IMG/VR virus record: IMGVR_UViG_3300032770_000002
Coordinates: 1 to 64,000 of that record
Direction: 5' to 3' (one strand)
DNA: 64,000 nucleotides
Part shown: positions 21,636 through 52,696 of the stretch, piece by piece
How positions within the stretch are numbered: position 1 is the stretch's first letter
Layout of the letters: each line of letters begins with the position of its first letter
The notes under the pieces: model-generated
What the model was told of the DNA's origin: nothing
What the model saw: the letters and a program-made list of their open reading frames with translations, nothing else
Database searches by the model: none
Made by a program: the position numbers and the translations under genes

Positions 21636-22039
21636 AGATTGAGAAGGAAGTTTCAATCGTGCCGTCCGTTCCAATCATGGGAACGATGACGACACTTGAA
21701 GCTATTTTTGGGAATTTCCAAGTTGGTTTTGAGGTTGGAAAGTTTCTCTACTATCGTGGCAGTTTGGCCCAAGTTTCAGGCATCACTGAAGCTGGGACCG
21801 TCGACCTCATTGGGTTTGGAATGGTGAAAGCTAGCGAGTGCAGCGTCCTGAAAAATTCCATCATGGACCACTTTCCAACGAGCATCGAGATACTTCCACC
21901 GCGTGACCGATGCTGGGTGTCACCTGAGGTCATCATCACTGACACTGAGCACAAGATTCGCTGTCCGAAGTGTTTCACCATCGCACGTGGAAAGACTTAC
22001 GCCGAGGCCTATGACAGGTGGTATGAACACTGCAAATGA
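21620..22039 (+). CDS. Hypothetical protein with C-terminal Zn-ribbon
   Basis: C...RCPKC...AEAYDRW (Lar-like pattern). Confidence 0.55.
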   Translation: MDQPIEIEKEVSIVPSVPIMGTMTTLEAIFGNFQVGFEVGKFLYYRGSLAQVSGITEAGTVDLIGFGMVKASECSVLKNSIMDHFPTSIEILPPRDRCWVSPEVIITDTEHKIRCPKCFTIARGKTYAEAYDRWYEHCK

Positions 22040-22368
22040 GCATGATTCGAGTCGGAAATAAGCGGGCAAATGCCAGTGACGAGTATAAGCCAGAGGCCGG
22101 CGAGGTCATCGTCAACATCGACCGCCCAAACGTCCTCGGAAACCCATACATTCCAAGCTCGTCAATGACACGCCAGCAGTGCATTGATCGCTTCCAGGAT
22201 GACTTGGACGCCGACTTTGCAGCCCGTGGACTGATGTTTGCTGAGTGCGCACGCATTGCTGGGTTGGTGCGTCAGGGTAAGGACGTGATCCTGATGTGTT
22301 GGTGTGTTCCAAAGCCTTGCCATGGCCACACGATTAAGGCCGCGATCGAAAGGTTGGTGAATGGCTGA
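22036..22368 (+). CDS. DUF4326-family protein
   Basis: IDRPNVLGNPY...LMCWCVPKPCHGHTI. Confidence 0.85.
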   Translation: MSMIRVGNKRANASDEYKPEAGEVIVNIDRPNVLGNPYIPSSSMTRQQCIDRFQDDLDADFAARGLMFAECARIAGLVRQGKDVILMCWCVPKPCHGHTIKAAIERLVNG

Positions 22369-22684
22369 GTTGAAGACAGCAGTTGAAGCGGCGATGGCGC
22401 GGTCTGAAAAGTCCCACCTAATCCCGCCAATGACTCACCCGCTGTCTCAATACTGGGAACAACCCAATCGCTTTGACATTGAGGTCGATGAGACCCACGC
22501 GTTGATGGGTCAAACGACTTTCAACCTGCTCCACGACTACTCAAACTCACAGCCAACCGGAGCATATGAGGGTAAAATGTGGCGGGCTTTTTACAGGCTG
22601 GACGGCTGGTGTCTCCTGTGGTTCGGGCCCAGCGACAAACCTGACATGGTTTCGGTGAACGCTAGAAAAATTCTAATCGCATGA
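22361..22684 (+). CDS. Conserved phage hypothetical protein
   Basis: [15 protein letters not shown]...[17 protein letters not shown]; overlapped in the operon. Confidence 0.65.
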
Positions 22685-23568
22685 AAGAATATCTCGACTT
22701 AATGCACCGCGTGCTTCAAGGGAAGCGACGAAAGGACAGGACTGGAGTAGGGACCGTCGGCGTGTTTGGTGAACAGATTAAGATCGACTTGCAGAAGGGG
22801 TTTCCACTCTTAACGACAAAGAAACTCCACACCAAAAGCATCGTTTACGAGCTGCTTTGGTTCCTCAAAGGGTTGACTAACAACGACTGGCTTAAGGAGC
22901 GTGGCGTCACGATTTGGAATGAGTGGGCCGACGAGCACGGTGACCTTGGTCCGGTCTATGGGGAGCAGTGGGTCAAGTGGCACGGCCTTAAAAAGGACTG
23001 GATAGAGGATGATAACTTGGGCCCGCGTGAACCCATCTACCGTGAGGTGGTCGTGAATCAAATCGACAACCTCATTCGAGACTTAAAGGACAACCCATTC
23101 AGTCGGCGGCACATTGTCAGCGCTTGGAATGTCTCGATGATTCCACAGATGAGGTTGCCACCGTGCCACACACTTTGGCAGTGCTACGTTGAAGAGCCAA
23201 ATCAAGGTGACGACCACATCATCAGTGACTTTGACCGAAATTCGTTGAGCCTTCACCTCTACGCGCGAAGCATCGACCTTTTTCTCGGCTTGCCATTCAA
23301 CATTGCGTCATACGCCCTGCTTACGCACATGCTCGCGGCCGTGACTGGTTTGGCCGTTGGCCGGTTGATCATCTCATTCGGCGATCTGCACATTTACCTC
23401 AACCACATCGACCAGTGTCGTGAGCAACTGAATCGTGAGCCGAGGCCGCTGCCAAGACTGGCTTGGGGAAGACCGGACATCACGAGCATCTACGACTTCC
23501 AGTTTGAGGACTTCGTCTTTTGTGGCTACGATCCACACCCGGCAATCAAGGCTCAAGTTGCCGTATGA
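22681..23568 (+). CDS. thyA: Thymidylate synthase (canonical, dUMP-specific)
   Basis: [45 protein letters not shown] (Asn specificity residue), GDLHIY. Confidence 0.97.
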
Positions 23569-40056: not shown

Positions 40057-42720
40057 ATGAGCCAAGACATCACAATTCAAACGTTTCCCGGGGTCTACGT
40101 CAACGTCCTTGACAACAGCTTTCCGACGAACATCGTTAGCCGATATAGTCTCGGCGTCACGGGCGTGGCATCCAAGGGGCCAATGAACGTCCCGACTCGG
40201 ACGCCATCCGTTACTTCATTCGTCAGCCAGTTTGGAAAGCCAGTTACGTCGAACCCAATGCCTGCCCAAGCCGTTGCGGCTGTGGGTGACTTTTCCGACG
40301 GCACCTGGTTTAACCGGGTCGGCCACGTCTACTCTGCCGTCGCAAGTGACGCGGCGAGTGTCGTTGGCTCAGGGTCGCCAGACCCATACAAGATTTACAC
40401 CTCATCGGCCAAGGACTTTCAACTTGGCGACTACATTCGCATCGTCGAGGCCGGCAAGATTTCGACGGTTAACGCGAGGGTCTCAGACTACATTCCTTCA
40501 GGCAACGTCATCAACCCGACTGGCCTTCAATTGGTGAGCACTGGTCCTGAAGCGGTTGAACTGGCCGACGACTACGTCAGCGCGTTCATTGACCGGAGTG
40601 AAGCCACGGACGCCGCGTCCAACGCCGAGTCATTCCTCAGTTCCATTGTCTACGGCGATAGCAACTATGTTGAAAGCGCCGGCTTCGTGACAGGGAGCAA
40701 GACGTCCTACAGTTTTGACGTCGATGGCTTTGTTGGGCCGCTGCCAATTACCAGCCTTGTCGTTTCCAGCGGCGTGGCCACGCTGACAATGTCCAACATG
40801 CCACGTTACCAAGTCGGCGATTACGTCCACATCGCCAACGCGGCCGTTAGCGGGTGCAATGGTGAGTTCGTCGTTCTCACAAGCGACCTCAGCAGTCAGA
40901 TCACCTTCAACGTGCCTGGCGAACTTGGGCCAGAGCTGCTTACGGGTGAAGCCCCTGTGGGTGGTTATGTGACCATCGACACGACTCCTGGAGCGTCTTA
41001 CGACTACACCAACGGCGTTGGTGAGACCCTCATCAATGGCGCCGCGCAAACTCAGACTACCGGAACGGTGGTTGCTCAGGGAAGCTTTATTCGAGTCTAC
41101 ACGTCGGCGCCGACGGCCACTGGGTCGTTGAAGCTTGTCGAGGGCGTGGCCGATGGAACGATCGCCGTGGCCGATGGTGCGACGGCTATCACCGTGGCCA
41201 TTCTTGCCCCTGGCGACCTCATCAAGATCGTTCAAACCAGTGGAGGTGGCCGGTCGACGACCTATGAGGCGATGGTCCAAGAAATCATTGGTGGGACGCA
41301 CGTCAATCTTTACCCGTCAAATGTGACGAACATCGGTTACCAGGCCGTGTCGCTGCAGGACAACTATTCAGCTGGCAACATCTATAAGGCTCACCGCGAC
41401 GCAAACGGCAACCTTGTCACGACGCTAGCCATTCACATGATTGCCGCCTCTGCCGGCACGTGGGCAAACAGTGACGGCGTTGCAAATGGACTGTGGGTCA
41501 CGGTGTCTCCTGGCGCCAACGCTGGCACGAAGAAGTTGCTCGTCTACGTTGACGGCACACTGGTTGAGACGATCGACAACTTGTCGATGGATTCGAGCTC
41601 AACGGACTACTTCCCAGCTCGCATCAACGGGCTCTCACAAAACATCGCCATCTTGACTGACACCGCTGGCAACCCAATTGGCATGCTTGGCTCTAGTCCG
41701 CCCGCCAACACGATGAACGGCTGGTCTGGCGCTTCGCAGAAGGTCAATTTTGCGGTCTTTGGCGACGAGTCACTCAACTATGGCCAAGGCTTTGACGGCG
41801 AAGTGATGACCACGCAGGACGTCATCGGCACGCTGTCTTCGACTGGAGCTTACACCGGGCTGCGGGCCTTCACACGCCCTGGCTCGAATTACAACTTGAG
41901 CGACCTCATCTGTCCTGGCATCACCGACTTAGCAGTGCACCAGGAAATGATCCTCATTGCCACGAAGATTTTTGCTGAGGCGCTCATTGACTCGCCAAGT
42001 GGGATAAACGGCCGACAGATCGTTGATTGGAGCAATGGCGCTGGAGACTATTCTGGCTCGCGTGCGGCCATTACAGCTTGGCAGGCTTCGCTGCCATGGA
42101 ATTGGATCAGCATCACTGACCCATTTACGGGCAACTCCATCAGTATCCCGCCGACAATCGCCTTGGCTCGCCAACGGGCCTTTACGTTTGACCACTTTAA
42201 GCCGTGGTATGCGGCTTCCGGCGTGAATCGTGGCGTCATCTCGATTGCCAACAGCGTCGAGTTTGCCACGGTCGATGATGACACGCGAAATGGCTTCATG
42301 GCATCAGGGCAGTCCATCACGCCCATCCTGGATGACTTTGGTCAAATCTTGGTCTGGGGCGACAGGACACTTCAGCGGACCAACTCCAAGCTGATCCAGC
42401 TGAGTGTGGCGACGCTGGTCAACTACCTGGCACTGAACATTGGGCAGCTTGGTCGGAAGTATATCTTCGACCCCAACGACCAGGAGCTGATCGTCCTCTT
42501 CACGAACGACCTTCGGTCGCTGTTTGAAGGGGTCAAGTCTGACCGTGGTATTTCGGACTACAATGTGGCCGCGGACAACTCGATCAACACGCCCGAAGTG
42601 CAAAACCAGCACGCAGCCATTGTCAACGTGGACTTCATTCCATTTGGGTCACTGGAGCGGCTCTACGTCAACCTGATTGTCGATCCTTCGGGCGCTACGA
42701 TCACCAACATCACGGGCTAG
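40057..42720 (+). CDS. Contractile tail sheath protein with inserted domains
   Basis: FPGVYVNVLD, GVASKGPMNVP, WYAASGVNRGVI, GQILVWGDRTL, RKYIFDPND, GISDYNV, LERLYV. Confidence 0.93.
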   Translation: MSQDITIQTFPGVYVNVLDNSFPTNIVSRYSLGVTGVASKGPMNVPTRTPSVTSFVSQFGKPVTSNPMPAQAVAAVGDFSDGTWFNRVGHVYSAVASDAASVVGSGSPDPYKIYTSSAKDFQLGDYIRIVEAGKISTVNARVSDYIPSGNVINPTGLQLVSTGPEAVELADDYVSAFIDRSEATDAASNAESFLSSIVYGDSNYVESAGFVTGSKTSYSFDVDGFVGPLPITSLVVSSGVATLTMSNMPRYQVGDYVHIANAAVSGCNGEFVVLTSDLSSQITFNVPGELGPELLTGEAPVGGYVTIDTTPGASYDYTNGVGETLINGAAQTQTTGTVVAQGSFIRVYTSAPTATGSLKLVEGVADGTIAVADGATAITVAILAPGDLIKIVQTSGGGRSTTYEAMVQEIIGGTHVNLYPSNVTNIGYQAVSLQDNYSAGNIYKAHRDANGNLVTTLAIHMIAASAGTWANSDGVANGLWVTVSPGANAGTKKLLVYVDGTLVETIDNLSMDSSSTDYFPARINGLSQNIAILTDTAGNPIGMLGSSPPANTMNGWSGASQKVNFAVFGDESLNYGQGFDGEVMTTQDVIGTLSSTGAYTGLRAFTRPGSNYNLSDLICPGITDLAVHQEMILIATKIFAEALIDSPSGINGRQIVDWSNGAGDYSGSRAAITAWQASLPWNWISITDPFTGNSISIPPTIALARQRAFTFDHFKPWYAASGVNRGVISIANSVEFATVDDDTRNGFMASGQSITPILDDFGQILVWGDRTLQRTNSKLIQLSVATLVNYLALNIGQLGRKYIFDPNDQELIVLFTNDLRSLFEGVKSDRGISDYNVAADNSINTPEVQNQHAAIVNVDFIPFGSLERLYVNLIVDPSGATITNITG

Positions 42721-43258
42721 TGGGTCTAATGTCGTTGATTACGGCAAATCGACCGAAGGCTTTTCTGGCCGCTCTATTGTAGGCTTTGGCTGCAGCAAGT
42801 TCACTTCGAAACATTCCAATTAGTCGGCCTTTTTTGTTGACTTGGATTTTAGCCTTCCAAAGGCCAGTCTTGGAATGGAGATGAACACCTTTAAATTTTG
42901 ATGTTAGACCTGATCGTCGGTCTTTTGGCCGATTACCCTGTTGTTGCACTTCTGTGGCCACTCTAAGATTGCAACGACGGTTGTCAAGACGCTCTCTATT
43001 AATGTGATCGGGTTCGCAACCACGCGGCACATTAATGATCCAGTAGGCCATCTGTAAATTTGCATGATTGGCGTAACCGTTATGTCCAAGATGCCATCTA
43101 TGTTTGTTGAGGCGGTCATAGTCGCGATTATTTACTATAGTGAAACCACACGAAGTGAAAACGGTATTACGTCCAGGGCGTCCAGGATGAATGGCTCTAA
43201 CAAGTTGAATGAGTCTTGCGTCAGGATCAAGAAGTGCTTCAAAGAATGCTACCGTCAT
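42710..43258 (-). CDS. HNH endonuclease with AP2 domain
   Basis: PDHINRERLDNRRCNLR; SKFKGV...WKAKI...AAKAYNRAARKAFGRFA. AT-rich and inverted between sheath and tube. Confidence 0.9.
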   Translation of the reverse strand: MTVAFFEALLDPDARLIQLVRAIHPGRPGRNTVFTSCGFTIVNNRDYDRLNKHRWHLGHNGYANHANLQMAYWIINVPRGCEPDHINRERLDNRRCNLRVATEVQQQGNRPKDRRSGLTSKFKGVHLHSKTGLWKAKIQVNKKGRLIGMFRSELAAAKAYNRAARKAFGRFAVINDIRPTSP

Positions 43259-43339
43259 TGATTCCAAGAACTGTAGATAAGCTGTGGAAAAGATGATTTT
43301 TATCGTCAGCGAAAAATTAGTAAATCCATCTAAGCCGTT

Positions 43340-43951
43340 ATGAGCAAAATGCTCTACAAAAATGAATGGGGCAGCCAAGGGTCAAACCTTGACCCACAAC
43401 GCACAGACCTGTTCCGGTTTTGGATCAACCTGCCGGCTGTCATTGGCGGCATGGGAAACTGGCAGGAGAACGTGTCGTTCGCCGTCCAGTCGTTTCCGTT
43501 CCCTGAACGCGCGCAGCAGACCTTTGAGATGAAGTATCTCAACCAGGTCAACCACATCCTCGGGTCTGACACGCCGACAGGGCCGATCGAGGTCCCTGTT
43601 CGCTACGCATTCACCCAGCCGACGGCTCAACTGCTCTATCGCTGGCACTACCTGACGTCGAACCCTCGAACTGGCTCAGTTGTTCGCACGACTCAGATCA
43701 AGACTTACGGGTTTTTCGCGTGGCTCATCCCGAGAAAGTTGACTCCCGACATCATCGACCAAATGGAAGTCGACCCGAACGCGCTTCAAATTGGCATGCA
43801 GTATCAGCTCGAAGGATGCATGCCGATCAACCTCAAGCCGACGGACGCCAACATGCTTGAGGGCAACGTGCCAGTCACGTTGACGTTCCGCCTGCAAATC
43901 GACAGGTTTTACCCGGTGAGTGTCGACGCGTCGAACATGATCTTTGCTTGA
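43340..43951 (+). CDS. Tail tube protein (gp19-like)
   Basis: LDPQRTDLFRF, FPFPE, LYRWH, YQLEGCMP, LTFRLQID; follows the sheath gene. Confidence 0.8.
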   Translation: MSKMLYKNEWGSQGSNLDPQRTDLFRFWINLPAVIGGMGNWQENVSFAVQSFPFPERAQQTFEMKYLNQVNHILGSDTPTGPIEVPVRYAFTQPTAQLLYRWHYLTSNPRTGSVVRTTQIKTYGFFAWLIPRKLTPDIIDQMEVDPNALQIGMQYQLEGCMPINLKPTDANMLEGNVPVTLTFRLQIDRFYPVSVDASNMIFA

Positions 43952-45383: not shown

Positions 45384-45851
45384 TTAAAAATTTAATTTGG
45401 CAAAGGAACCAAAAATTTTTCTGGCTTGACGATCATAAACCACGGCCGCTTCCGCTTCATCGTCAAACTGCCCAATAAAATTGTGTTGAACGCTAACACT
45501 CCATTTTCGATTTTGCTTATTCCAACTAACTCCTTTAAATTGACTTGAACGATTTGGGGTTTTACGTCTATTTGCGGTATTTTGGGCATGGGTCGCTGGT
45601 CGAAGATTTGACCGTGTATTATTCAGACCGTCACCGTTTTCGTGATCAACCTCTGGCAATCCAATTTTTGCAGCTATTTCACGGTGCATGTAAACACTCT
45701 TCTCACCGGCCGACGGGACGCTCTTGGCATACCAGTAAGTTTTATGTTTTGTTTGACTCTTTACCGCATACCATTTTCGTAGACTAAGCCATTCAAAATC
45801 TTCATCATCGACTAAAGCCGATTTATTTTGCGTAAGCGGTATTCTTTTCAC
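45384..45851 (-). CDS. HNH endonuclease with AP2 domain
   Basis: GTG overlapping the upstream TAG; IPLTQNKSALVDDEDF, YMHREI, VDHENGDGLNNTRSNLR, SQFKGVSW. Confidence 0.9.
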   Translation of the reverse strand: MKRIPLTQNKSALVDDEDFEWLSLRKWYAVKSQTKHKTYWYAKSVPSAGEKSVYMHREIAAKIGLPEVDHENGDGLNNTRSNLRPATHAQNTANRRKTPNRSSQFKGVSWNKQNRKWSVSVQHNFIGQFDDEAEAAVVYDRQARKIFGSFAKLNF

Positions 45852-47542
45852 TAAAAATTTCCGATGACCAGTGCCGGGCATGTCTGCTGGTCTGCCTTTT
45901 TTGCGTTGAACCGCAGGTCGTTTATGGCGTCTTCGACGCTGAAAACAATTGGCACGCCGTGGACGTTGAACGACGTGTTTATCAACGGAGTTCCGCACTC
46001 CTCAAGGATGCGTCGAATTGGAGCGGGTTCTGTCGGGTAAATGATTTGCGGCCTTCCTGACCATGAACTTTGGTCAGGATAAACGTGGGCGACGCCCATA
46101 AAATTATCCACAGGACGGACGTAATTGAGCGTCGTGATCATGTAGCGTTCTGAACCGACAACTCTGTTGAGGTTTGATTCAAAGGCCCACTTCGCCCACC
46201 TGGATGAAACGACCGGGGCAAATGGCATGACCGTATTTCGGCCGTTGATGTAATTGATGGTGTCAACATTTTCACTCGTCGGAACGGCTAGCGTGGACGT
46301 GTTGCAGAGTGCTCGCGGGCCAAACTCCATGTTTCCGTGGATGGTGTTGACAAGTTTGTTGGCCTTCAACAATTGCAAGACCTGCTCAATGTAGTCGTCA
46401 AGCGTGTGGGCAACGCGAACGTCAAGCTCGTCGCCATTGAGCATGATTCGCCTGAACGAAAGGTCACGCCTTCCCCACTTGAGCGACGTGAACGGAAATG
46501 AATATCCCTTGGAGGCGTAGACTCCGATCGCCGCTCCTTGGTCACCAGCAAGTGGAACTGCGCAAAACTGGCCGGAGATGGAGCTGAGAATGGAGTGGTT
46601 TAGCTTGACGTTGTAGTGCACGCCGCCTGTCACGATGACGTGCTTGACTCGGCTCCACGTCAAGATGAACCGGTAGGCTTCTTCGATGACCGTTTGAATG
46701 TAGTGGCCAACCACGACTCGAGTTTCCCACTGGTTAACGGTATTTAGGGCCTTGACGATCTTTCTCAGCCTTGCCCTGATTTTTCGTCTGGCCGACTCCA
46801 TGTCGTTAACTTGGATGAAGTCATCGAGTTTCGACTCCTGAGGGCGGAGAAAATTTGCGCTGCAAATCGAGGCCCACTCTTCGGCGTGGTCTTTTGCCAT
46901 CTGACGAAGCCACTCGATTTCCCGGCTACGGAGGACTTCGTTGACGTGACTCTCATAGCCTAGAAATTTATACTCGTCTTGGTTCATCGTCATCCCGACA
47001 AATTCAGTGGCATACTGGTAAAGCAATCCAAGTGACTTGTCGTAACCGTAGATCCGTGAAAGAAGTTGTGGCGTCCAACGCTCGGTGTCCGGCTGAATGA
47101 CGTAGATGGAAAACACCTCTTGGGCTGTGCCAAAACCGTCACTGACGACGATGTGGACGTCCCCCTCCGGCACTTGGCGCATGTGGCGTCGGTAAAATTC
47201 CACGGCCGCCCAAGCGTGTGAGTCGTGGTGTGTAAATCTGTGGTCTACGGACACGATCTTGCACTTTGGCAGGAACGTGCGAAGCACGTCAGGCTGCCAA
47301 TACTTCTGGAGCCTTGCGTGACGGGCTTTTTCAAGATTTTCACAGTCAAACCAGTGTGAGACGTAAACCGTCACGTCCTTCTTGAGCTTGGTGTGCTTGA
47401 TGACCTCATTGATGGCGTTGATTGGGAAGCGTGAGTCACTTTTCTTGCGAGTAAGCCGCTCTTCTTCGTATCCAATAACGTCAACGCCGTCGGTCCAGAT
47501 GGCCGAGGCATTGTGTCCGAGTGTGAGAAGTAGGTTGTTCAC
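45851..47542 (-). CDS. Carbamoyltransferase, NodU/CmcH/TobZ family
   Basis: GHNASA, YEEERLTRKK, HHDSHA, SDGFG, SLGLLY, EYKFLG, GGVHYNVKLN, GDQGAAIG, EFGPRAL, PFAP, INTSFNVHG.PIV. Confidence 0.93.
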   Translation of the reverse strand: MNNLLLTLGHNASAIWTDGVDVIGYEEERLTRKKSDSRFPINAINEVIKHTKLKKDVTVYVSHWFDCENLEKARHARLQKYWQPDVLRTFLPKCKIVSVDHRFTHHDSHAWAAVEFYRRHMRQVPEGDVHIVVSDGFGTAQEVFSIYVIQPDTERWTPQLLSRIYGYDKSLGLLYQYATEFVGMTMNQDEYKFLGYESHVNEVLRSREIEWLRQMAKDHAEEWASICSANFLRPQESKLDDFIQVNDMESARRKIRARLRKIVKALNTVNQWETRVVVGHYIQTVIEEAYRFILTWSRVKHVIVTGGVHYNVKLNHSILSSISGQFCAVPLAGDQGAAIGVYASKGYSFPFTSLKWGRRDLSFRRIMLNGDELDVRVAHTLDDYIEQVLQLLKANKLVNTIHGNMEFGPRALCNTSTLAVPTSENVDTINYINGRNTVMPFAPVVSSRWAKWAFESNLNRVVGSERYMITTLNYVRPVDNFMGVAHVYPDQSSWSGRPQIIYPTEPAPIRRILEECGTPLINTSFNVHGVPIVFSVEDAINDLRFNAKKADQQTCPALVIGNF

Positions 47543-48510
47543 TTTCGCTTGTCTATCGCGTTAAATAGCAGGTTCATGACGCACTGGTAGTGGACATATT
47601 TTGAATTGCCACGAGACGTGGTGCAGAACAGCGACCTCATGGCAGGTGAAATTGGAGCTGTCAAGTTTCCTTCAATCGTCAGCAGGTCATGAAGCAACAT
47701 CGAGGCTTCGCCGGGCTCTAGCGGAGGAAATGTCAGAGCCATGCCAGCGGGTTCACCGACTATAAGCGTGTCATCTCGAACGTGGAATGAACCGACATTG
47801 TGGTGGTAATAACCCATCTTAATGCCACTTCGGCCTTTTCCCCAAAGTTCGGCACGGACATAGTCCATCAAAAACGTAAAGAAGGCCACGTCATATCGAA
47901 ATCCATTCCACAGTTCATTGGACCGCATTGTCGCAATGGCGTGAAGCGCACCGTCACGCACTAAAAATTGCAAACTGGTCGTGCAAATGTGGTCTTTTGT
48001 GTCACTGAGATTGACCCTGGGACGGTTAAACAGGACGACGGCTTGCCTTGACATCGGGTCCTTTGCCAACCGCTTGATGGCCAACTCAAGCTGTCCTTCC
48101 TCGAAGACATACTGGCCGTAATTCGAGTTGATGTCGACACGCGTGTCTTCTGGAATGCTGCCGTCACGATGTTTGGCTGCGACGTTGTCCGTGATGCGTT
48201 TCCACATGTCTGGCCGATACTTGTCGATGCCATGAAGACGCTGATCGGCTTTGGCATACCACGCCAATTGGGCACCGACGTAGTCAATGTCGTCTTCAGG
48301 CCTTGAGGTTTGGGTGAAAAAGACCGCCCCTGGGACTTCGACGCTAAAGTGAAAATTCAGCAACTCGAGCCAACGAACGCCCTGGTGGTCTTCGACAACT
48401 GGAGCCTTGCAGAGTTGGTCGATACAGCTTGAAAATTTCAGCCCAAGTTTTTCATCCTTTTGCAATGTAGGCGTCGATGATGCTGTTGATGGTATTGACA
48501 TCGGTTTCAT
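47539..48510 (-). CDS. Thymidylate-synthase homolog, dCMP hydroxymethylase (T4 gp42)-like
   Basis: INSNYG, DPMSRQ, DHICT (catalytic Cys), MRSNELWNGFRYD (Asp at the cytosine-specificity position), NVGSFH. Confidence 0.85.
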   Translation of the reverse strand: MKPMSIPSTASSTPTLQKDEKLGLKFSSCIDQLCKAPVVEDHQGVRWLELLNFHFSVEVPGAVFFTQTSRPEDDIDYVGAQLAWYAKADQRLHGIDKYRPDMWKRITDNVAAKHRDGSIPEDTRVDINSNYGQYVFEEGQLELAIKRLAKDPMSRQAVVLFNRPRVNLSDTKDHICTTSLQFLVRDGALHAIATMRSNELWNGFRYDVAFFTFLMDYVRAELWGKGRSGIKMGYYHHNVGSFHVRDDTLIVGEPAGMALTFPPLEPGEASMLLHDLLTIEGNLTAPISPAMRSLFCTTSRGNSKYVHYQCVMNLLFNAIDKRK

Positions 48511-49063
48511 TGTCAGCGCTGACTTCGGTTATTTGGGACGACTGGTAGAAGCCGTGGATAAGCGTCCGGATAAACAAGAACTCGACATCCTGGAGAAGCC
48601 CCAGTTCGTTTGGGCGCATCGCATCAGACTCCTTTTTAGGCAACGGCCGAAACAGGAAGATGTGGTCGTAGGTTCTTGCGGTGGTCAGCGTTCGAAAGTA
48701 AAGCCACTTGAAGAAGCTCGTGTATTTTTCGAGCTGCAAGCTTGTCAACATTGACTTGTCAACGTAAAAAACGTAGTAGAAAAATGAATCGGCAAGTGAC
48801 CGGTCGGTCAGGATGATGGAATTCGGGTGTTTCTTGAGGGCGGCCTGTTCAGCGTTGAACTTCTCGCTGATGATTTCAATTTGCAGTTCAATGTATCGGA
48901 CTGGGTCCCGTCGAAGGGCGTCAATGTTGTCAATGCTAGCCCGGTCACGAATGCAGTCGCCAAGAACGACGACCCCGTTATAGTTTGTCCTTTCGGCAAT
49001 CTTTCGAATCATCGTGGACTTGCCCGAATGACACGCACCAGAAAAAGCGATCAACTTGCTCAT
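48452..49063 (-). CDS. P-loop (d)NMP kinase-like protein
   Basis: IAFSGACHSGKSTMI, ILTDRS, YDHIF; first gene of the modification operon. Confidence 0.75.
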   Translation of the reverse strand: MSKLIAFSGACHSGKSTMIRKIAERTNYNGVVVLGDCIRDRASIDNIDALRRDPVRYIELQIEIISEKFNAEQAALKKHPNSIILTDRSLADSFFYYVFYVDKSMLTSLQLEKYTSFFKWLYFRTLTTARTYDHIFLFRPLPKKESDAMRPNELGLLQDVEFLFIRTLIHGFYQSSQITEVSADNETDVNTINSIIDAYIAKG

Positions 49064-49867: not shown

Positions 49868-50027
49868 AGCACTCAAGGTCCACTGGTCGACCTTGGCGAC
49901 GACGGCATTTTTTGTGCGAGGGGCGGTAATCGACCTAACCCGAGTCCCAGATTACGCCATTGACTGGGTCATTGAGACGTTTTCGGAACTTCAAGAAAAG
50001 ACGAAAAACGTCCCAAGAATGTGGTAA
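49842..50027 (+). CDS. Probable frameshift extension (gp51/gpGT-like) of the gp26-like protein
   Basis: The +1 frame is open across TTTTTTC at 49844-49850, giving ...VHWSTLATTAFFVRGAVIDLTRVPDYAIDWVIETFSELQEK; no good start nearby. Confidence 0.6.
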   Translation, partial: TFFVAASLKALKVHWSTLATTAFFVRGAVIDLTRVPDYAIDWVIETFSELQEKTKNVPRMW

Positions 50028-50032
50028 AATAA

Positions 50033-51031
50033 TTGTTTACAGTGAATAAGTGGCTTGAGGTCATCAATGTTGAGTGTCCGGATCACGGGCCGTATCAGGT
50101 TCAACGACAAGCTTTTGACGGGAAATTAAAAGGTTGTCCTGATTGTATTAAAATTTATCGAGTTTCAAAGGTGAATCAAATTCGAAAATTAGTCAAAAAT
50201 CGCCCTGGCCCAAAGAAGTGGTATAAAACTGAAACTGGACGTTTATTCCTTCTCCGACAGGCCGCTGAAAATAGTCGAAGAGCTGAATTGAGAAGACGTA
50301 GAAGGTTTACTCCTCAAGTCAAAAACTTAGTTAGAAAATTTTGTCATGTTGATAAAAGGTGGCTTCAAAGCAACGGATATTCGATTGATGCCGCACTTCG
50401 ATTTTATGCTGATGTCTACGTTGATTTTGATGTCGATTTTGACGTTCTCGACTCAGTTATTACACGAGATGAACGTTTGTCCGGCCATGAGCACGATCGT
50501 CCAACAATCAGGGCATCTACCATCGCCAGGTGTATTCGATGGACTGGCACGGTTGGTCAGGGTAAAATTCAACAGCCAATATTTTTCAAGTCATTCTTGA
50601 AAACTGGAAGTGGCAACTATCCCATTATAGTTGCACGTCGTGCGGCATTTGAATTTTTTCACGGCTTAAGTCTACCAGATGACGTGTATGTTTTACCTAA
50701 CTGTAAACATTGTCTGGATGTCTTATGCATTAATCCATTACACCATTTTTTAGGTGTGGAGAGAAATCGTCAGGACTACGTCAGAAGTATTTCAAATGTT
50801 GGTCGTCCAAAGACTAATGTGAAATCAACCCAATCCTCAGTGCCGCTTTCAATAAGGCCATTGAAGCTATATCCACTTCCAACCGGCTGGACAAGACGAT
50901 ATTTTGGTAAAATCACACGAACTGGCAAAGATGGAGAAACATGGCGCAAAAATTTTTTGAATGTGGCGAAACACGGTGGAAAAACTTTAGTGGAACTAGT
51001 AGTTGATGCCCGTGTTAATGGAGAATCGTGA
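50033..51031 (+). CDS. Degenerate HNH (Zn-binding-loop type) homing endonuclease-like protein
   Basis: CPDHG...GCPDC N-terminus; CIRWTG...VARRAAFEFFHG...C...CINPLH; AT-rich. Confidence 0.6.
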   Translation: MFTVNKWLEVINVECPDHGPYQVQRQAFDGKLKGCPDCIKIYRVSKVNQIRKLVKNRPGPKKWYKTETGRLFLLRQAAENSRRAELRRRRRFTPQVKNLVRKFCHVDKRWLQSNGYSIDAALRFYADVYVDFDVDFDVLDSVITRDERLSGHEHDRPTIRASTIARCIRWTGTVGQGKIQQPIFFKSFLKTGSGNYPIIVARRAAFEFFHGLSLPDDVYVLPNCKHCLDVLCINPLHHFLGVERNRQDYVRSISNVGRPKTNVKSTQSSVPLSIRPLKLYPLPTGWTRRYFGKITRTGKDGETWRKNFLNVAKHGGKTLVELVVDARVNGES

Positions 51032-51206
51032 CACCGTCAAATGCCCGAAGTGCGGCCACGAGTTCCGGTGTGACGTTGGCTGGCAGAAAGCTAGTGTTGC
51101 AGTTGGGTGTCCGAAGTGTTCGGAGATGATTCACCTGAATCTGCGCGGCTCTGGCACCAGCCCTGATGCTCGGCCAATCGTCGGGCCCAGGCCAGAAAAG
51201 CCGTGA
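51018..51206 (+). CDS. Small Zn-ribbon protein
   Basis: VKCPKCGHEF...VGCPKCSEMI. Confidence 0.55.
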   Translation: MENRDTVKCPKCGHEFRCDVGWQKASVAVGCPKCSEMIHLNLRGSGTSPDARPIVGPRPEKP

Positions 51207-51804
51207 CTGTGAAGGCGTTTTTTGCGATGTTACACTGCTTGCAACACGGGACCACATTGTCATCAATGTAACCTCGCTTGGAGTCAACTCGGTCAATCCC
51301 CATGTAACAGAATCTTGTCGGGTTAAATCTTCCAAGGCCATTTCTATATTCGACTGGGTAAGGTCTGCATCCACAATAGTGACAGTCGCTTTGCATAAGT
51401 CTTTTGGCCAATTCCTTGTCGAGGTTAAATTCAACATTCATTCTGAGAGATCGTTGATATATCGAGTTGAAGACTCGCGTGAATCCGGCTTCAAATGAGT
51501 TAATGCGAGTGACCCTGGTGGCCGCGGCAGTTCTGATCTTTTGGGCGCATTGAGCGCACTGTTTCATGCTATGGTTTTTCCTGCCGAATAAAGACGATGG
51601 TGGAACTAATTTGACGTTTCCGCAGGTGCATTGAAGTTTGAAGCACCACAGCAGTTTTCCACCGTAACGTGAATTTTGGGCCCACTCGTAACCGATGACT
51701 TTGAAACGACCGATTTCAGACCCGATTGGGTGTTCTTGAATGTATTGAGCACGTTTTTCTTTTCGAAGATTTTTACGGTGTTCCTCCGTCATTATGTATT
51801 TCAT
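51091..51804 (-). CDS. HNH endonuclease
   Basis: CTCG; CHYCG...GIDRVDSKRGYIDDNVVPCCKQCNIAK. Confidence 0.88.
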   Translation of the reverse strand: MKYIMTEEHRKNLRKEKRAQYIQEHPIGSEIGRFKVIGYEWAQNSRYGGKLLWCFKLQCTCGNVKLVPPSSLFGRKNHSMKQCAQCAQKIRTAAATRVTRINSFEAGFTRVFNSIYQRSLRMNVEFNLDKELAKRLMQSDCHYCGCRPYPVEYRNGLGRFNPTRFCYMGIDRVDSKRGYIDDNVVPCCKQCNIAKNAFTVTAFLAWARRLAEHQGWCQSRADSGESSPNTSDTQLQH

Positions 51805-51832
51805 AGGTTATTGATCTAACTCAAATACAGGC

Positions 51833-52696
51833 ATGACTGACCTCATAATTGACGGGAATGGATTTTTCGCTCACGCGTATTATTCGGCGGTTAAGCACGG
51901 GCGTGATCCTGTGAAAGTGGCCATGAAGTCAATCGTCAAGATGATTCGAAATGACGAATCTTACTTTTCACGGCACATTGATAGGCTTCTTTTTTGTTGG
52001 GACGGGGCTCCTAAGACGGCTAAACATCGGCCAACTCCAAAGCCTGAAGATTATCATCCGAAATTGGCTGACTTTTCTACGAGGTTGACGCCATTGACTG
52101 GAAGTGCTCAAGTCATGCTTGATGACCATGAAGCGGACGACGTTGTCGCTTCTGCGTCAGAGCAGACTAAAGCTGATCATGTGGTGGTCGTTAGTTCGGA
52201 CAAGGACCTCTCGCAGCTCCAATGTGACCGAGTCTCGTTTTATGACGTTCACTCGAAGATGCTCTTGACGCGGCGGGTCATCTGTGAGCGATGGCATGTT
52301 CACCACCCAATCCAAGTCGCCATTGCACTGGCCATCATTGGGGATATCGGGGACGGCATCAAGGGCGTGCACAAGTGGGGTGAGGGAAAGGTCAAAAAGC
52401 TATTTTCAACCATCCCACGTGAGACGCCGTTCGACCAGGTCATCGAGATCATCGTCAGTCAGATGAACGATGAACAGCAGGCTCAGTTTCTCGAGTGTTT
52501 GAGCGTGACGCTGTTGGACACGACAATAGAAGGCGTTCCTGAACCTGCGCCAGTAGCGCTGGATGACACTGAGGCGCGCAAGATTGAGCGAGAGATGGCT
52601 ATGCCATGGGCTGCCAGCGACAAGACGTCGCAGAACATCAACGAGTTTGACCGCTGGATGCGCGGTGAGAAAGTTACAGGCTCATCAACGGGATAG
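51833..52696 (+). CDS. 5'-3' exonuclease / RNase H (FEN family)
   Basis: LIIDGN, EADDVVAS, SSDKDLSQL, AIIGDIGDGIKGV..WGEG. Confidence 0.92.
   Translation: MTDLIIDGNGFFAHAYYSAVKHGRDPVKVAMKSIVKMIRNDESYFSRHIDRLLFCWDGAPKTAKHRPTPKPEDYHPKLADFSTRLTPLTGSAQVMLDDHEADDVVASASEQTKADHVVVVSSDKDLSQLQCDRVSFYDVHSKMLLTRRVICERWHVHHPIQVAIALAIIGDIGDGIKGVHKWGEGKVKKLFSTIPRETPFDQVIEIIVSQMNDEQQAQFLECLSVTLLDTTIEGVPEPAPVALDDTEARKIEREMAMPWAASDKTSQNINEFDRWMRGEKVTGSSTG

What the first reader, a model, noticed from the sequence alone, without database searches (positions are those of the whole stretch)
47539..48510. gp42-like enzyme with three non-canonical active-site residues
I aligned it by eye to T4 gp42 as I recall it (YIQRELEWY / DFMCT / MRSNDVVFGFRND / GSLHVY). 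This protein reads YVGAQLAWY / DHICT / MRSNELWNGFRYD / GSFHVR. The catalytic Cys and specificity Asp are kept. The catalytic Glu60 equivalent is Gln (codon 48268-48270), the RSND Asp is Glu, and the sugar 3'-OH-binding Tyr is Arg. Inference: altered chemistry (different C5 substituent, folate-independent hydroxylation or ribonucleotide preference), which would change what the carbamoyltransferase receives.
Basis: partly seen in the sequence, partly recalled or inferred. Interest (0 to 1): 0.75.

Follow-up and report, generated by a model that had tools for sequence, protein, structure and literature searches.

The report
Glutamate-less dCMP hydroxymethylase homolog in phage
A wetland giant phage carries, between a nucleotide kinase and a DNA carbamoyltransferase, a relative of the T4 enzyme that makes hydroxymethyl-cytosine. 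The relative has lost the glutamate that all known folate-using members need, so it either does the usual job in an unusual way or does different chemistry.

Summary
ORF 47539-48510 (-) is an intact thymidylate-synthase-fold protein, closest to T4 gp42 and MilA. HMMER, MAFFT and hhalign all place Gln81 at gp42 Glu60, Glu199 at Asp171 and Arg245 at Tyr218. Cys176 and Asp207 are kept.

Gln (rarely Leu) at the Glu60 site marks a well-supported clade of about 45 metagenomic proteins; 122 of 126 other relatives keep Glu. Asp171Glu marks a sub-clade. Arg245 is not conserved: that site varies freely inside the sub-clade.

Every clade member with visible context lies in a kinase / TS-like / carbamoyltransferase cassette. 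That system is known to give 5-carbamoyloxymethyl-cytosine (Yang 2021). Carbamoyltransferases also pair with canonical Glu/Asp/Tyr enzymes, so the variant is not required for the pairing.

All nucleotide-binding, deoxyribose-type and water-activating residues are invariant, as is the PABA side of the folate site. Only the pterin and activation side is remodelled.

My best reading (about 0.5) is a dCMP hydroxymethylase that activates methylene-folate without Glu60. A cofactor or product switch (about 0.3) has a 2026 precedent in the Asp169Asn flavin 5-hydroxy-dCMP synthases. It is also suggested by Glu60-less, Asn171 paralogues beside other carbamoyltransferases and by a second, canonical paralogue in this genome. 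Ribonucleotide preference is not supported.

The parts
48452..49063 (-). dNMP-kinase-like P-loop protein (203 aa), first gene of the cassette
   Evidence: Pfam AAA_28 (E 1e-11) and dNK (E 4e-6). phrog_2107 'thymidylate kinase'. A homologous gene sits directly upstream of the TS-like gene in all related loci.
47539..48510 (-). TS-fold, gp42/MilA-like enzyme (323 aa): the finding
   Evidence: PF00303. PDB phmmer hits to gp42 and MilA. The AF2 model has pLDDT 90.4 and pTM 0.91. Foldseek finds gp42 at E 9e-17 and MilA over the full length, TM 0.67-0.69. The 5' end overlaps the kinase gene by 59 nt, or 50 nt if Met4 is the start.
48268..48270 (-). Gln81 codon (CAA) at the position of gp42 Glu60 / E. 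coli TS Glu58
   Evidence: Placement. Codon. Clade: Q 40, L 4 of 44. Outside the clade: E 122 of 126.
47914..47916 (-). Glu199 codon at the position of gp42 Asp171 / E. coli TS Asp169
   Evidence: E in 29 clade members, D in 14, S in 2. D in 124 of 126 outside the clade.
47776..47778 (-). Arg245 codon at the position of gp42 Tyr218 (relaxed site)
   Evidence: Y in 124 of 126 outside the clade. Variable only in the Glu199 sub-clade.
47983..47985 (-). Cys176 codon, the catalytic nucleophile (gp42 Cys148)
   Evidence: Invariant in all 172 aligned sequences.
47890..47892 (-). Asp207 codon, the cytosine-specificity residue (gp42 Asp179 / TS Asn177)
   Evidence: Invariant in the clade. The role of this residue is described.
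47989..47994 (-). Asp173-His174. Asp173 matches gp42 Asp145, the water activator. His174 is a clade-specific residue at gp42 Phe146 and a candidate substitute acid/base.
   Evidence: D145 is invariant. His occurs in 37-38 of 44-45 clade members, against E/F/V/T outside the clade.
48133..48135 (-). Asp126, a clade-specific residue at gp42 Glu91, three residues before the Ser129-x-Tyr131 water-binding pair
   Evidence: D in 43-44 of 44-45 clade members. Mostly T outside the clade.
45851..47542 (-). O-carbamoyltransferase (563 aa, NodU/TobZ family). Its GTG start overlaps the TS-like stop codon (GTGA).
   Evidence: Pfam PF02543 and PF16861. phrog_1601. Solved homologues are NovN, GdmN and TobZ. 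The 4-nt overlap is shown. It shares short motifs with the biochemically characterised 5hmC carbamoyltransferase printed in PMC8670742.
22681..23568 (+). Canonical thymidylate synthase ThyA. This paralogue shows the phage relies on the host methylene-folate pool.
   Evidence: PF00303 at E 5e-105. Glu, Asp, Asn177 and Tyr are all present in the alignment.

Best explanation
The protein is a functional dCMP-modifying enzyme of the gp42/MilA hydroxymethylase branch. It is the middle gene of a tightly packed kinase / TS-like / O-carbamoyltransferase cassette in a complete 230-kb contractile-tailed phage from a wetland.

Inferred pathway:
1. Cys176 attacks C6 of dCMP. Asp207 selects cytosine. Arg155, Ser197 and His243 hold a deoxyribonucleotide.
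2. A one-carbon unit from methylene-tetrahydrofolate is added at C5.
3. The exocyclic methylene is hydrated by the conserved Ser129 / Tyr131 / Asp173 water system, giving 5-hydroxymethyl-dCMP.
4. The neighbouring kinase phosphorylates this product.
5. The carbamoyltransferase turns the hydroxyl into 5-carbamoyloxymethyl-cytosine, either on the triphosphate or on DNA.

What differs from gp42 is the cofactor side. The Glu that normally activates methylene-folate is Gln. The pterin-contacting Asp is Glu. Tyr218 and Arg220 are no longer constrained. I infer that folate is bound in a shifted pose and activated by another group. The clade-specific His174 and Asp126 are candidates.

Shown: fold, residue equivalences, clade conservation, gene context. 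Inferred: substrate, cofactor, product, and the compensating residues.
For: - By sequence and by fold the protein is far closer to the two solved hydroxymethylases than to the flavin-dependent enzyme. gp42 scores E 3e-18, MilA 4.5e-17, and 9iqc only 1e-4. Foldseek ranks gp42 and MilA first.
- Every nucleotide-site and hydroxylation residue of gp42 is invariant across the clade, down to about 35% identity: S94, Y96, R123, D145, C148, T149, R168, S169, N170, D179, H216. Mutagenesis in PMC6400193 shows S94, Y96 and D145 are needed for hydroxymethylation.
- The PABA-stacking residues Tyr56 and Trp82 are invariant (44 of 44), Gly175 and Phe176 are kept in most members (39 and 33 of 44), and the folate-tail Arg177 is kept in most of the Glu171 sub-clade (26 of 29). 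This contrasts with the class C Glu60-less paralogues, which have lost Tyr56, Trp82, Gly175 and Arg177.
- The phage keeps a canonical ThyA, so methylene-folate is available and used during infection.
- The same carbamoyltransferase subfamily and the same kinase pair with canonical E/D/Y homologues in other phages.
- Carbamoyltransferases next to Q-type and next to canonical enzymes are at least 90% identical at 97 columns. They differ consistently at only one position. This argues for the same acceptor.
- An enzyme of this subfamily converts 5hmC, but not 5mC or 5hmU, to 5-carbamoyloxymethyl-C.
Against: [quoted passage not shown]
- From memory, not checked here: Glu58/Glu60 to Gln mutants of E. 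coli and L. casei TS and of gp42 lose orders of magnitude in kcat.
- Four clade members have Leu at this site, which can do no acid-base or hydrogen-bond work.
- A change at the neighbouring Asp (D169N) is now a proven marker of a cofactor switch in this superfamily.
- The genome carries a second cytosine-type, fully canonical paralogue (TS2) that could itself supply 5hm-dCMP.
- The Q-clade may be sister to Glu60-less paralogues whose folate site is clearly dismantled.
- No activity has been measured for any member of the clade.
Confidence: 0.5

Rival explanations
1. Cofactor or product switch. The Glu60-less enzymes no longer use methylene-folate in the classical way. One option is a flavin/O2 hydroxylation like RB69 gp48, giving 5-hydroxy-dCMP. 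Another is a different one-carbon donor or nucleophile. The carbamoyltransferase would then receive a different acceptor, for example giving 5-carbamoyloxy-cytosine.
For: - The three deviating sites all line the folate pocket.
- Two of them are also changed in the flavin-dependent 5hodCMP synthase RB69 gp48 (Asn171, Phe218). The Glu60 site there aligns to Phe in two of three alignments.
- D169N is experimentally diagnostic of that switch.
- About 20 other carbamoyltransferase loci carry, next to carbamoyltransferase and kinase, a Glu60-less paralogue with 'MRSSN' (Asn171) plus a separate canonical enzyme.
- A tree that holds these paralogues together with the Q-clade is not rejected and has the higher likelihood (AU p 0.90).
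- The window's genome also has a canonical cytosine-type paralogue, TS2.
- The one class-specific carbamoyltransferase position is His309 against Phe.
Against: - The diagnostic Asn is absent. The site is Glu, Asp or Ser in all 45 clade members.
- The PABA-side folate residues that the Asn171 paralogues have lost are invariant here.
- Similarity to the solved flavin enzyme is weak (E 1e-4 against 3e-18 for gp42), and it is not among the top 50 Foldseek matches.
- Basal members of the clade still have Asp171 and Tyr218.
- The tested carbamoyltransferase of this subfamily works very well on 5hmC. 5hoC was not tested.
Confidence: 0.3
2. The protein is no longer the primary hydroxymethylase. It would be a sub-functionalised paralogue. 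It might bind or channel 5hm-dCMP made by TS2 toward the kinase and carbamoyltransferase. Or it might run a folate-independent Cys-dependent exchange on 5-substituted dCMP.
For: - A canonical Asp179-type paralogue is present in the only complete genome of the lineage and in L095 and the class C loci.
- Loss of the folate-activating Glu, with the Tyr218 and Arg220 sites relaxed.
- The tight, overlapping gene arrangement with the kinase and the carbamoyltransferase.
Against: - The catalytic Cys, the cytosine-protonating Asp and the water-activating triad are strictly invariant over deep divergence. That is what is expected of an enzyme still doing the full reaction.
- In fragments of related phages (up to 94 kb searched) only ThyA and the Q-type enzyme were found.
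- TS2 belongs to a widespread family that occurs in phages without any carbamoyltransferase.
Confidence: 0.12
3. Ribonucleotide (CMP) preference caused by loss of the sugar-binding Tyr.
For: In gp42, Tyr218 hydrogen-bonds the sugar 3'-OH together with His216. It is Arg here.
Against: - The experimentally defined determinants of ribo preference are Lys133 and Ala176 in MilA and BcmA. The A176S/K133R mutant reverts to dCMP.
- This protein and the whole clade have Arg and Ser, like gp42 and TS, and keep His216.
- MilA itself keeps the Tyr.
- The Tyr site is simply variable, including Tyr in the closest relatives.
- The context is a DNA-modification cassette.
Confidence: 0.03

Closest known systems
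T4 gp42 deoxycytidylate hydroxymethylase (PDB 1B5E, 6A9A)
   Same: Same fold and best sequence match. Shared residues: catalytic Cys, cytosine-specific Asp, the Ser/Tyr/Asp water-activating set, Arg/Ser/His deoxyribonucleotide contacts, and the Tyr56/Trp82 PABA contacts. Both are followed by an enzyme that decorates the 5-hydroxymethyl group.
   Different: Glu60 is Gln, Asp171 is Glu, Tyr218 is Arg and Arg220 is Asp. There is a C-terminal extension of about 75 residues that gp42 lacks. Sequence identity is only about 25%. The partner enzyme is a carbamoyltransferase rather than a glucosyltransferase.
MilA CMP hydroxymethylase of mildiomycin biosynthesis (PDB 5B6D, 5JNH)
   Same: The predicted structure aligns over its whole length, including the C-terminal helical extension (about 320 columns, TM 0.67-0.69). 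Both have Asp at the specificity site.
   Different: MilA has Glu68, Asp and Tyr218, plus the ribo-preference pair Lys133/Ala176. This protein has Gln, Glu and Arg, plus the deoxy pair Arg155/Ser197.
Flavin-dependent 5-hydroxy-dCMP synthases (RB69 gp48, DLP3 gp80, HY126; PDB 9IQC) (Lee et al. 2026, PMC13326640)
   Same: A TS-fold enzyme acting on dCMP with Cys and Asp179 kept. It has substitutions at the Asp171 and Tyr218 sites and probably at the Glu60 site. It works together with a dedicated dNMP kinase.
   Different: The diagnostic Asn at E. coli position 169 is absent (it is Glu here). Overall similarity is weak. The folate PABA residues are retained here. Flavin use is untested.
TS homologue + 5hmC carbamoyltransferase system giving 5-carbamoyloxymethyl-cytosine (Yang et al. 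2021, PMC8670742)
   Same: A TS homologue with Asp at position 177 co-occurs with a two-domain NodU/TobZ-type carbamoyltransferase on phage contigs. The window's carbamoyltransferase shares several exact motifs with the enzyme they characterised.
   Different: That paper analysed positions 147 and 177 only and does not mention the Glu58/Glu60 site. Whether their contig carried a Q-type or a canonical TS homologue could not be settled. The co-occurring dCMP deaminase and PRA-PH domains they report are absent from this genome.

Membership tests
Thymidylate synthase / pyrimidine hydroxymethylase superfamily (PF00303) | Profile match above the curated cut-off, and the TS fold | tested here: met
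   PF00303 at 33.4 bits against a cut-off of 24.3. AF2 model with pLDDT 90.4. Foldseek probability 1.00 to gp42, MilA and many TS structures.
Thymidylate synthase / pyrimidine hydroxymethylase superfamily (PF00303) | Catalytic Cys nucleophile and phosphate-binding Arg residues | tested here: met
   Cys176, Arg155 and Arg196 are invariant.
gp42-type folate-dependent dCMP hydroxymethylase | Asp at the pyrimidine-specificity site (gp42 Asp179) | tested here: met
   Asp207 is invariant in the clade.
gp42-type folate-dependent dCMP hydroxymethylase | Acidic residue at the water entrance (Asp145) with Ser94 and Tyr96 | tested here: met
   Asp173, Ser129 and Tyr131 are invariant. Their roles are described.
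gp42-type folate-dependent dCMP hydroxymethylase | Catalytic Glu60 that activates methylene-tetrahydrofolate | tested here: not met
   Gln81 by three alignment methods. Q or L throughout the clade.
gp42-type folate-dependent dCMP hydroxymethylase | Asp171 and Tyr218 contacting the pterin and the 3'-OH | tested here: not met
   Glu199 and Arg245. The roles of these residues are described.
gp42-type folate-dependent dCMP hydroxymethylase | Methylene-tetrahydrofolate dependence and 5hm-dCMP as product | not testable with these tools
   This needs an enzyme assay or LC-MS.
Flavin-dependent 5-hydroxy-dCMP synthase | Asn at E. coli TS position 169 (gp42 171), the published diagnostic | tested here: not met
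   Glu199 here. The clade has E 29, D 14, S 2 and no Asn.
Flavin-dependent 5-hydroxy-dCMP synthase | Bound FMN and O2-derived oxygen | not testable with these tools
   This needs purified protein and 18O2 labelling, as described.
MilA/BcmA-type CMP hydroxymethylase | Lys133 and Ala176, the ribose-preference pair | tested here: not met
   Arg155 and Ser197.
TS homologue + 5hmC carbamoyltransferase DNA modification system | Cytosine-type TS homologue adjacent to a two-domain NodU/TobZ-type carbamoyltransferase on a phage genome | tested here: met
   The arrangement is conserved in 12 or more related loci.
TS homologue + 5hmC carbamoyltransferase DNA modification system | 5-carbamoyloxymethyl-cytosine in the DNA | not testable with these tools
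   There is no cultured phage. The sequence comes from a wetland metagenome.

The most novel reading that the evidence does not exclude
[quoted passage not shown] This branch comprises the Q-clade of this phage lineage and possibly its sister group with Asn171 and a dismantled folate site. It would parallel the recently found flavin-dependent 5-hydroxy-dCMP synthases. The carbamoyltransferase in these phages would then decorate something other than, or in addition to, 5-hydroxymethyl-cytosine, for example 5-hydroxy-cytosine. That would give a cytosine modification not yet described.
Probability: 0.3. Interest if true: 0.85.

Novelty: new variant of a known kind. Interest (0 to 1): 0.62.

Why it matters
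The TS fold was long thought to do one kind of chemistry with an invariant catalytic Glu. In 2026 a single Asp-to-Asn change was shown to mark a switch to flavin-dependent hydroxylation.

This finding is a second natural, deeply conserved departure at the cofactor site, and it is always tied to a DNA carbamoyltransferase. Two outcomes are possible:
- If the enzyme still makes 5hm-dCMP, it shows how methylene-folate can be activated without the 'essential' Glu. That is a long-standing mechanistic point for TS enzymology.
- If it does not, it points to a new phage DNA base.

Either way it supplies a simple sequence marker (Gln/Leu/Met at the Glu60 site) for sorting metagenomic TS homologues. It also supplies a small set of genes whose products can be tested directly by the published plasmid LC-MS assay. 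Modified cytosines matter for phage resistance to restriction and CRISPR and as tools for epigenetic sequencing.

Tried and rejected
- **Near-identical DNA in deposited phages:** none found.
- **Searching the long JGI/ENA contigs of relatives for further TS paralogues:** those records are not held. Only five IMG/VR fragments could be searched.
- **Literature on E58Q:** the full-text search returned nothing relevant. Statements about mutant kinetics therefore rest on memory and are marked as such.
- **Later papers on 5-carbamoyloxymethyl-cytosine phages:** none in the library.
- **Placing the biochemically tested MetaGPA carbamoyltransferase in class A or B using 15 short motifs:** not discriminating. 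The window's carbamoyltransferase shares 7, but some canonical-TS loci share 5-6. A full alignment was not made, because that sequence exists only as printed text and I did not paste it.
- **Convergent (three or more) independent losses of Glu60:** the free quick trees suggested this. The AU tests do not reject a single origin for the Q-clade plus the Asn171 paralogues (p 0.90, with the constrained tree having the higher likelihood). They also do not reject the Q-clade plus P0117 (p 0.10). I therefore do not claim convergence.
- **Two small ORFs between carbamoyltransferase and canonical TS in L088 and L089:** they give only faint TS-core similarity (hhalign probabilities 44% and 1%). No conclusion.
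- **dCTPase, dUTPase, MazG, PRA-PH, dCMP deaminase and DHFR families:** not found in the genome. How, or whether, unmodified dCTP is excluded is unknown.
- **Whether relatives of this phage also carry TS2:** unresolved.
- **Pseudogene or sequencing error:** rejected, given the intact frame and the conservation across the clade.
Full report
**What is there**

The window is the first 64 kb of a complete 230,253-bp phage genome with direct terminal repeats. It was assembled from a wetland metagenome.

ORF 47539-48510 on the minus strand encodes 323 residues. It passes the Pfam thymidylate-synthase model (33.4 bits, cut-off 24.3) and matches PHROG 160. Among solved structures its best sequence matches are T4 gp42 (E 3e-18) and MilA (E 4.5e-17). 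Ordinary thymidylate synthases and the RB69-type enzyme 9iqc score only 1e-4 to 1e-5.

An AlphaFold2 model built on 110 relatives is confident (pLDDT 90.4, pTM 0.91). Foldseek ranks gp42 and MilA first. MilA aligns over the whole length, including the C-terminal helical extension that gp42 lacks.

The gene is packed between two others on the same strand. Upstream is a P-loop dNMP-kinase-like gene (48452-49063; AAA_28 and dNK), whose end it overlaps. Downstream is a two-domain NodU/TobZ-type O-carbamoyltransferase (45851-47542). The carbamoyltransferase's GTG start overlaps the TS-like stop codon in GTGA.

Around the cassette lie a tail sheath gene, a 5'-3' exonuclease and a baseplate hub.

**Check of the observation**

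They give Glu60->Gln81, Cys148->Cys176, Asp171->Glu199, Asp179->Asp207 and Tyr218->Arg245.

The Gln codon is CAA at 48268-48270, one base from GAA. It is not an error, because the state is shared by the whole clade.

**How special the residues are**

An exhaustive HMMER search of 1.8 billion representatives found 3,989 relatives. Twenty-three have E below 1e-30, followed by a clear drop.

- In the close group (about 45 sequences, 35-61% identical) the Glu60 site is Gln in 40 and Leu in 4.
- In 126 more distant relatives it is Glu in 122.
- Asp171 and Tyr218 are kept in 124 each of those 126.
- The nearest homologues in deposited phages, two of them next to beta-glucosyltransferases, are all Glu/Asp/Tyr.

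On maximum-likelihood trees the Gln/Leu group is one well-supported clade (SH-aLRT 95-99) nested among Glu/Asp/Tyr sequences. The Asp171Glu state marks a sub-clade inside it. Tyr218 is lost repeatedly, but only inside that sub-clade, where Arg220 also turns acidic.

So Gln81 is the clade marker, Glu199 is a sub-clade marker, and Arg245 is one outcome at a relaxed site. Other clade-specific residues are His174 (gp42 Phe146, next to the water-activating Asp and two residues before the Cys) and Asp126 (gp42 Glu91).

**What is kept**

Every residue that binds the nucleotide or is needed for hydroxylation in gp42 is invariant in the clade: Ser94, Tyr96, Arg123, Asp145, Cys148, Thr149, Arg168, Ser169, Asn170, Asp179 and His216.

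Mutagenesis of gp42 showed that Ser94, Tyr96 and Asp145 are required (PMC6400193).

The MilA work defined ribo versus deoxy preference by Lys133/Ala176 versus Arg/Ser (PMC5175136). The clade has Arg and Ser, so a deoxyribonucleotide is expected, and the ribonucleotide idea is not supported.

On the cofactor side, the PABA-stacking Tyr56 and Trp82 are invariant, and Gly175 and Phe176 are kept in most members.

The changed positions are Glu60, Asp171, Tyr218 and Arg220. They are the ones that, in the gp42 ternary complex, activate methylene-folate through a water at N10 or contact the pterin ring and its water shell.

**Context in other genomes**

Every clade member whose surroundings could be read has the same kinase / TS-like / carbamoyltransferase order inside the same syntenic tail-gene block. 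This covers L002-L006, L010-L014, L045, L087 and L097-L102. The link with the carbamoyltransferase is therefore complete, but it is inherited within one phage lineage.

A survey of 78 IMG/VR loci found with a carbamoyltransferase profile shows three arrangements:

- **Class A:** the Q-type enzyme just upstream of the carbamoyltransferase (6 loci).
- **Class B:** a single canonical Glu/Asp/Tyr, Asp179 homologue a few kb downstream (about 40 loci, including jumbo phages with DnaE).
- **Class C:** two homologues (about 20 loci, plus L095 with P0145). One is canonical. The other, beside the carbamoyltransferase and kinase, lacks Glu60 (Met/Leu/Ile) and mostly has Asn at 171 ('MRSSN'). It has also lost Tyr56, Trp82, Gly175 and Arg177.

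A further group pairs a distant carbamoyltransferase with a canonical TS-kinase fusion. One relative of that group, P0117, has Gln and also follows a carbamoyltransferase.

In an unselected sample of TS-like viral loci, only 4 of 57 Glu-type genes had a carbamoyltransferase within 4 kb. All Glu60-less ones did.

The number of independent losses of Glu60 is not settled. Free trees need three or four. But a tree uniting the Q-clade with the class C paralogues is not rejected and fits better (AU p 0.90). Adding P0117 to the Q-clade is not rejected either (p 0.10).

**The genome's other paralogues**

The phage has a canonical ThyA (22681-23568; E 5e-105) with Glu, Asp, Asn177 and Tyr.

It also has a third homologue, TS2, at 187967-188797 next to a class II ribonucleotide reductase. 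TS2 has Glu/Asp/Tyr, Asp179 and the hydroxylation residues. TS2 belongs to a large family (more than 1,100 proteins at about 60% identity) that also occurs in phages without carbamoyltransferase.

No dCMP deaminase, PRA-PH, MazG, dUTPase-fold or DHFR gene was detected.

**What is known**

Yang et al. 2021 (PMC8670742) found that TS homologues with Asp177 and carbamoyltransferases co-occur on cytosine-modified phage contigs. They showed that one such carbamoyltransferase, with carbamoyl phosphate and ATP, converts 5hmC to 5-carbamoyloxymethyl-cytosine in single-stranded DNA, in 5hmdCTP and, less well, in RNA. It does not act on 5mC or 5hmU. They did not examine the Glu58/60 site.

The enzyme they printed shares exact motifs with the window's carbamoyltransferase. 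I could not decide which class it came from.

Lee et al. 2026 (PMC13326640) showed that TS homologues with Asn at E. coli position 169 make 5-hydroxy-dCMP using a flavin and O2. These include RB69 gp48, DLP3 gp80 and nine diverse others. They also showed that a dedicated dNMP kinase acts next. RB69 gp48 equals PDB 9iqc. It has Asn171 and Phe218, and the Glu60 site aligns to Phe in two alignments and to Glu in one.

**Interpretation**

I think the most likely reading (about 0.5) is that the enzyme still makes 5hm-dCMP from dCMP and methylene-folate, and that the cassette ends in 5-carbamoyloxymethyl-cytosine. Three observations weigh most:

- The nucleotide and hydroxylation machinery and the PABA side of the folate site are fully conserved.
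- The enzyme is much closer to gp42 and MilA than to the flavin enzyme.
- Carbamoyltransferases paired with Q-type and with canonical enzymes are nearly indistinguishable. Ninety-seven columns are at least 90% identical in all three classes, and only one position, His309 against Phe, is class-specific.

The price of this reading is that the role of Glu60 must be taken over or made unnecessary. His174 and Asp126 are candidates by conservation only.

The main rival (about 0.3) is a cofactor or product switch. It draws on the precedent at the same Asp, on the Leu variants, on the class C paralogues that may be the sister group, and on the presence of TS2.

A third reading (about 0.12) is that the protein has become an accessory to TS2. 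The invariance of the catalytic residues argues against it.

Nothing here measures activity, so the product remains inferred.

**Novelty**

The cassette as a kind is known. The conserved Glu60-less state of its TS homologue, the follow-on changes at Asp171, Tyr218 and Arg220, and the Asn171 paralogues beside other carbamoyltransferases are not described in the papers I could search. I rate it a new variant of a known kind. It is of real interest to people working on TS mechanism and on phage DNA hypermodification, and it can be tested directly with a published assay.

Noticed in passing
G000 187967-188797 (outside the window; L008:1414-2244): A third TS-family paralogue, TS2, sits next to a class II ribonucleotide reductase with a TSCPD domain. 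It has canonical Glu/Asp/Tyr, the cytosine-type Asp179 and the hydroxylation residues. It belongs to a family of more than 1,100 metagenomic proteins at about 60% identity whose product is unknown.
   Followed up: partly
L118:8357-9151, L129:8373-9212, L132:8422-9321, L095 (P0145) and about 16 further IMG/VR loci: These carbamoyltransferase-kinase cassettes in other phages carry a TS-like paralogue with Met/Leu/Ile at the Glu60 site. It has 'MRSSN' (Asn171, the published signature of flavin 5-hydroxy-dCMP synthases), Lys146, and has lost the folate PABA residues. A separate canonical homologue lies 1-2 kb away. This hints at carbamoylation of 5-hydroxy-cytosine or at mixed modifications.
   Followed up: partly
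window 45851-47542 (-), residue His309: This is the only position that consistently separates carbamoyltransferases paired with Q-type TS homologues (His, 10 of 10) from those paired with canonical ones (Phe, 90-100%). It lies in the GGV-x-YN motif.
   Followed up: no
window 22681-23568 (+) and 22036-22368 (+): Canonical ThyA (E 5e-105), with a DUF4326 protein just upstream. The phage therefore encodes three TS-fold proteins.
   Followed up: partly
window 42710-43378 (-) and 45384-45998 (-): Two HNH_3 endonuclease ORFs flank the region downstream of the carbamoyltransferase. The second overlaps the carbamoyltransferase's 3' end as an ORF. Related loci have no ORF with an HNH domain hit at these places, so they look like homing-endonuclease insertions.
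   Followed up: no
window 50001-52000: GC drops to 0.44 against about 0.53 elsewhere. The ORFs here, 50033-51031 (+) and 51091-51804 (-), have no Pfam match. They interrupt the kinase-to-exonuclease spacing seen in relatives, so they are probably mobile insertions.
   Followed up: no
L089:6760-7416 and L088:7341-7955: These small ORFs lie between the carbamoyltransferase/kinase and the canonical TS homologue in two jumbo-phage loci. They show a faint resemblance to the TS core around the 'DP-S/T-R ... D-x-x-C' region (hhalign probabilities 44% and 1%). They may be degenerate TS-like proteins or unrelated.
   Followed up: partly
L015, L022, L032, L077 (IMG/VR): A distant carbamoyltransferase type is followed by a canonical TS homologue of about 480-500 aa. 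In L032 the extension gives a weak thymidylate-kinase domain match (below Pfam's cut-off); L015 gave none, and L022 and L077 were not scanned. If real, this is the same three activities as in the window but in a different arrangement.
   Followed up: partly
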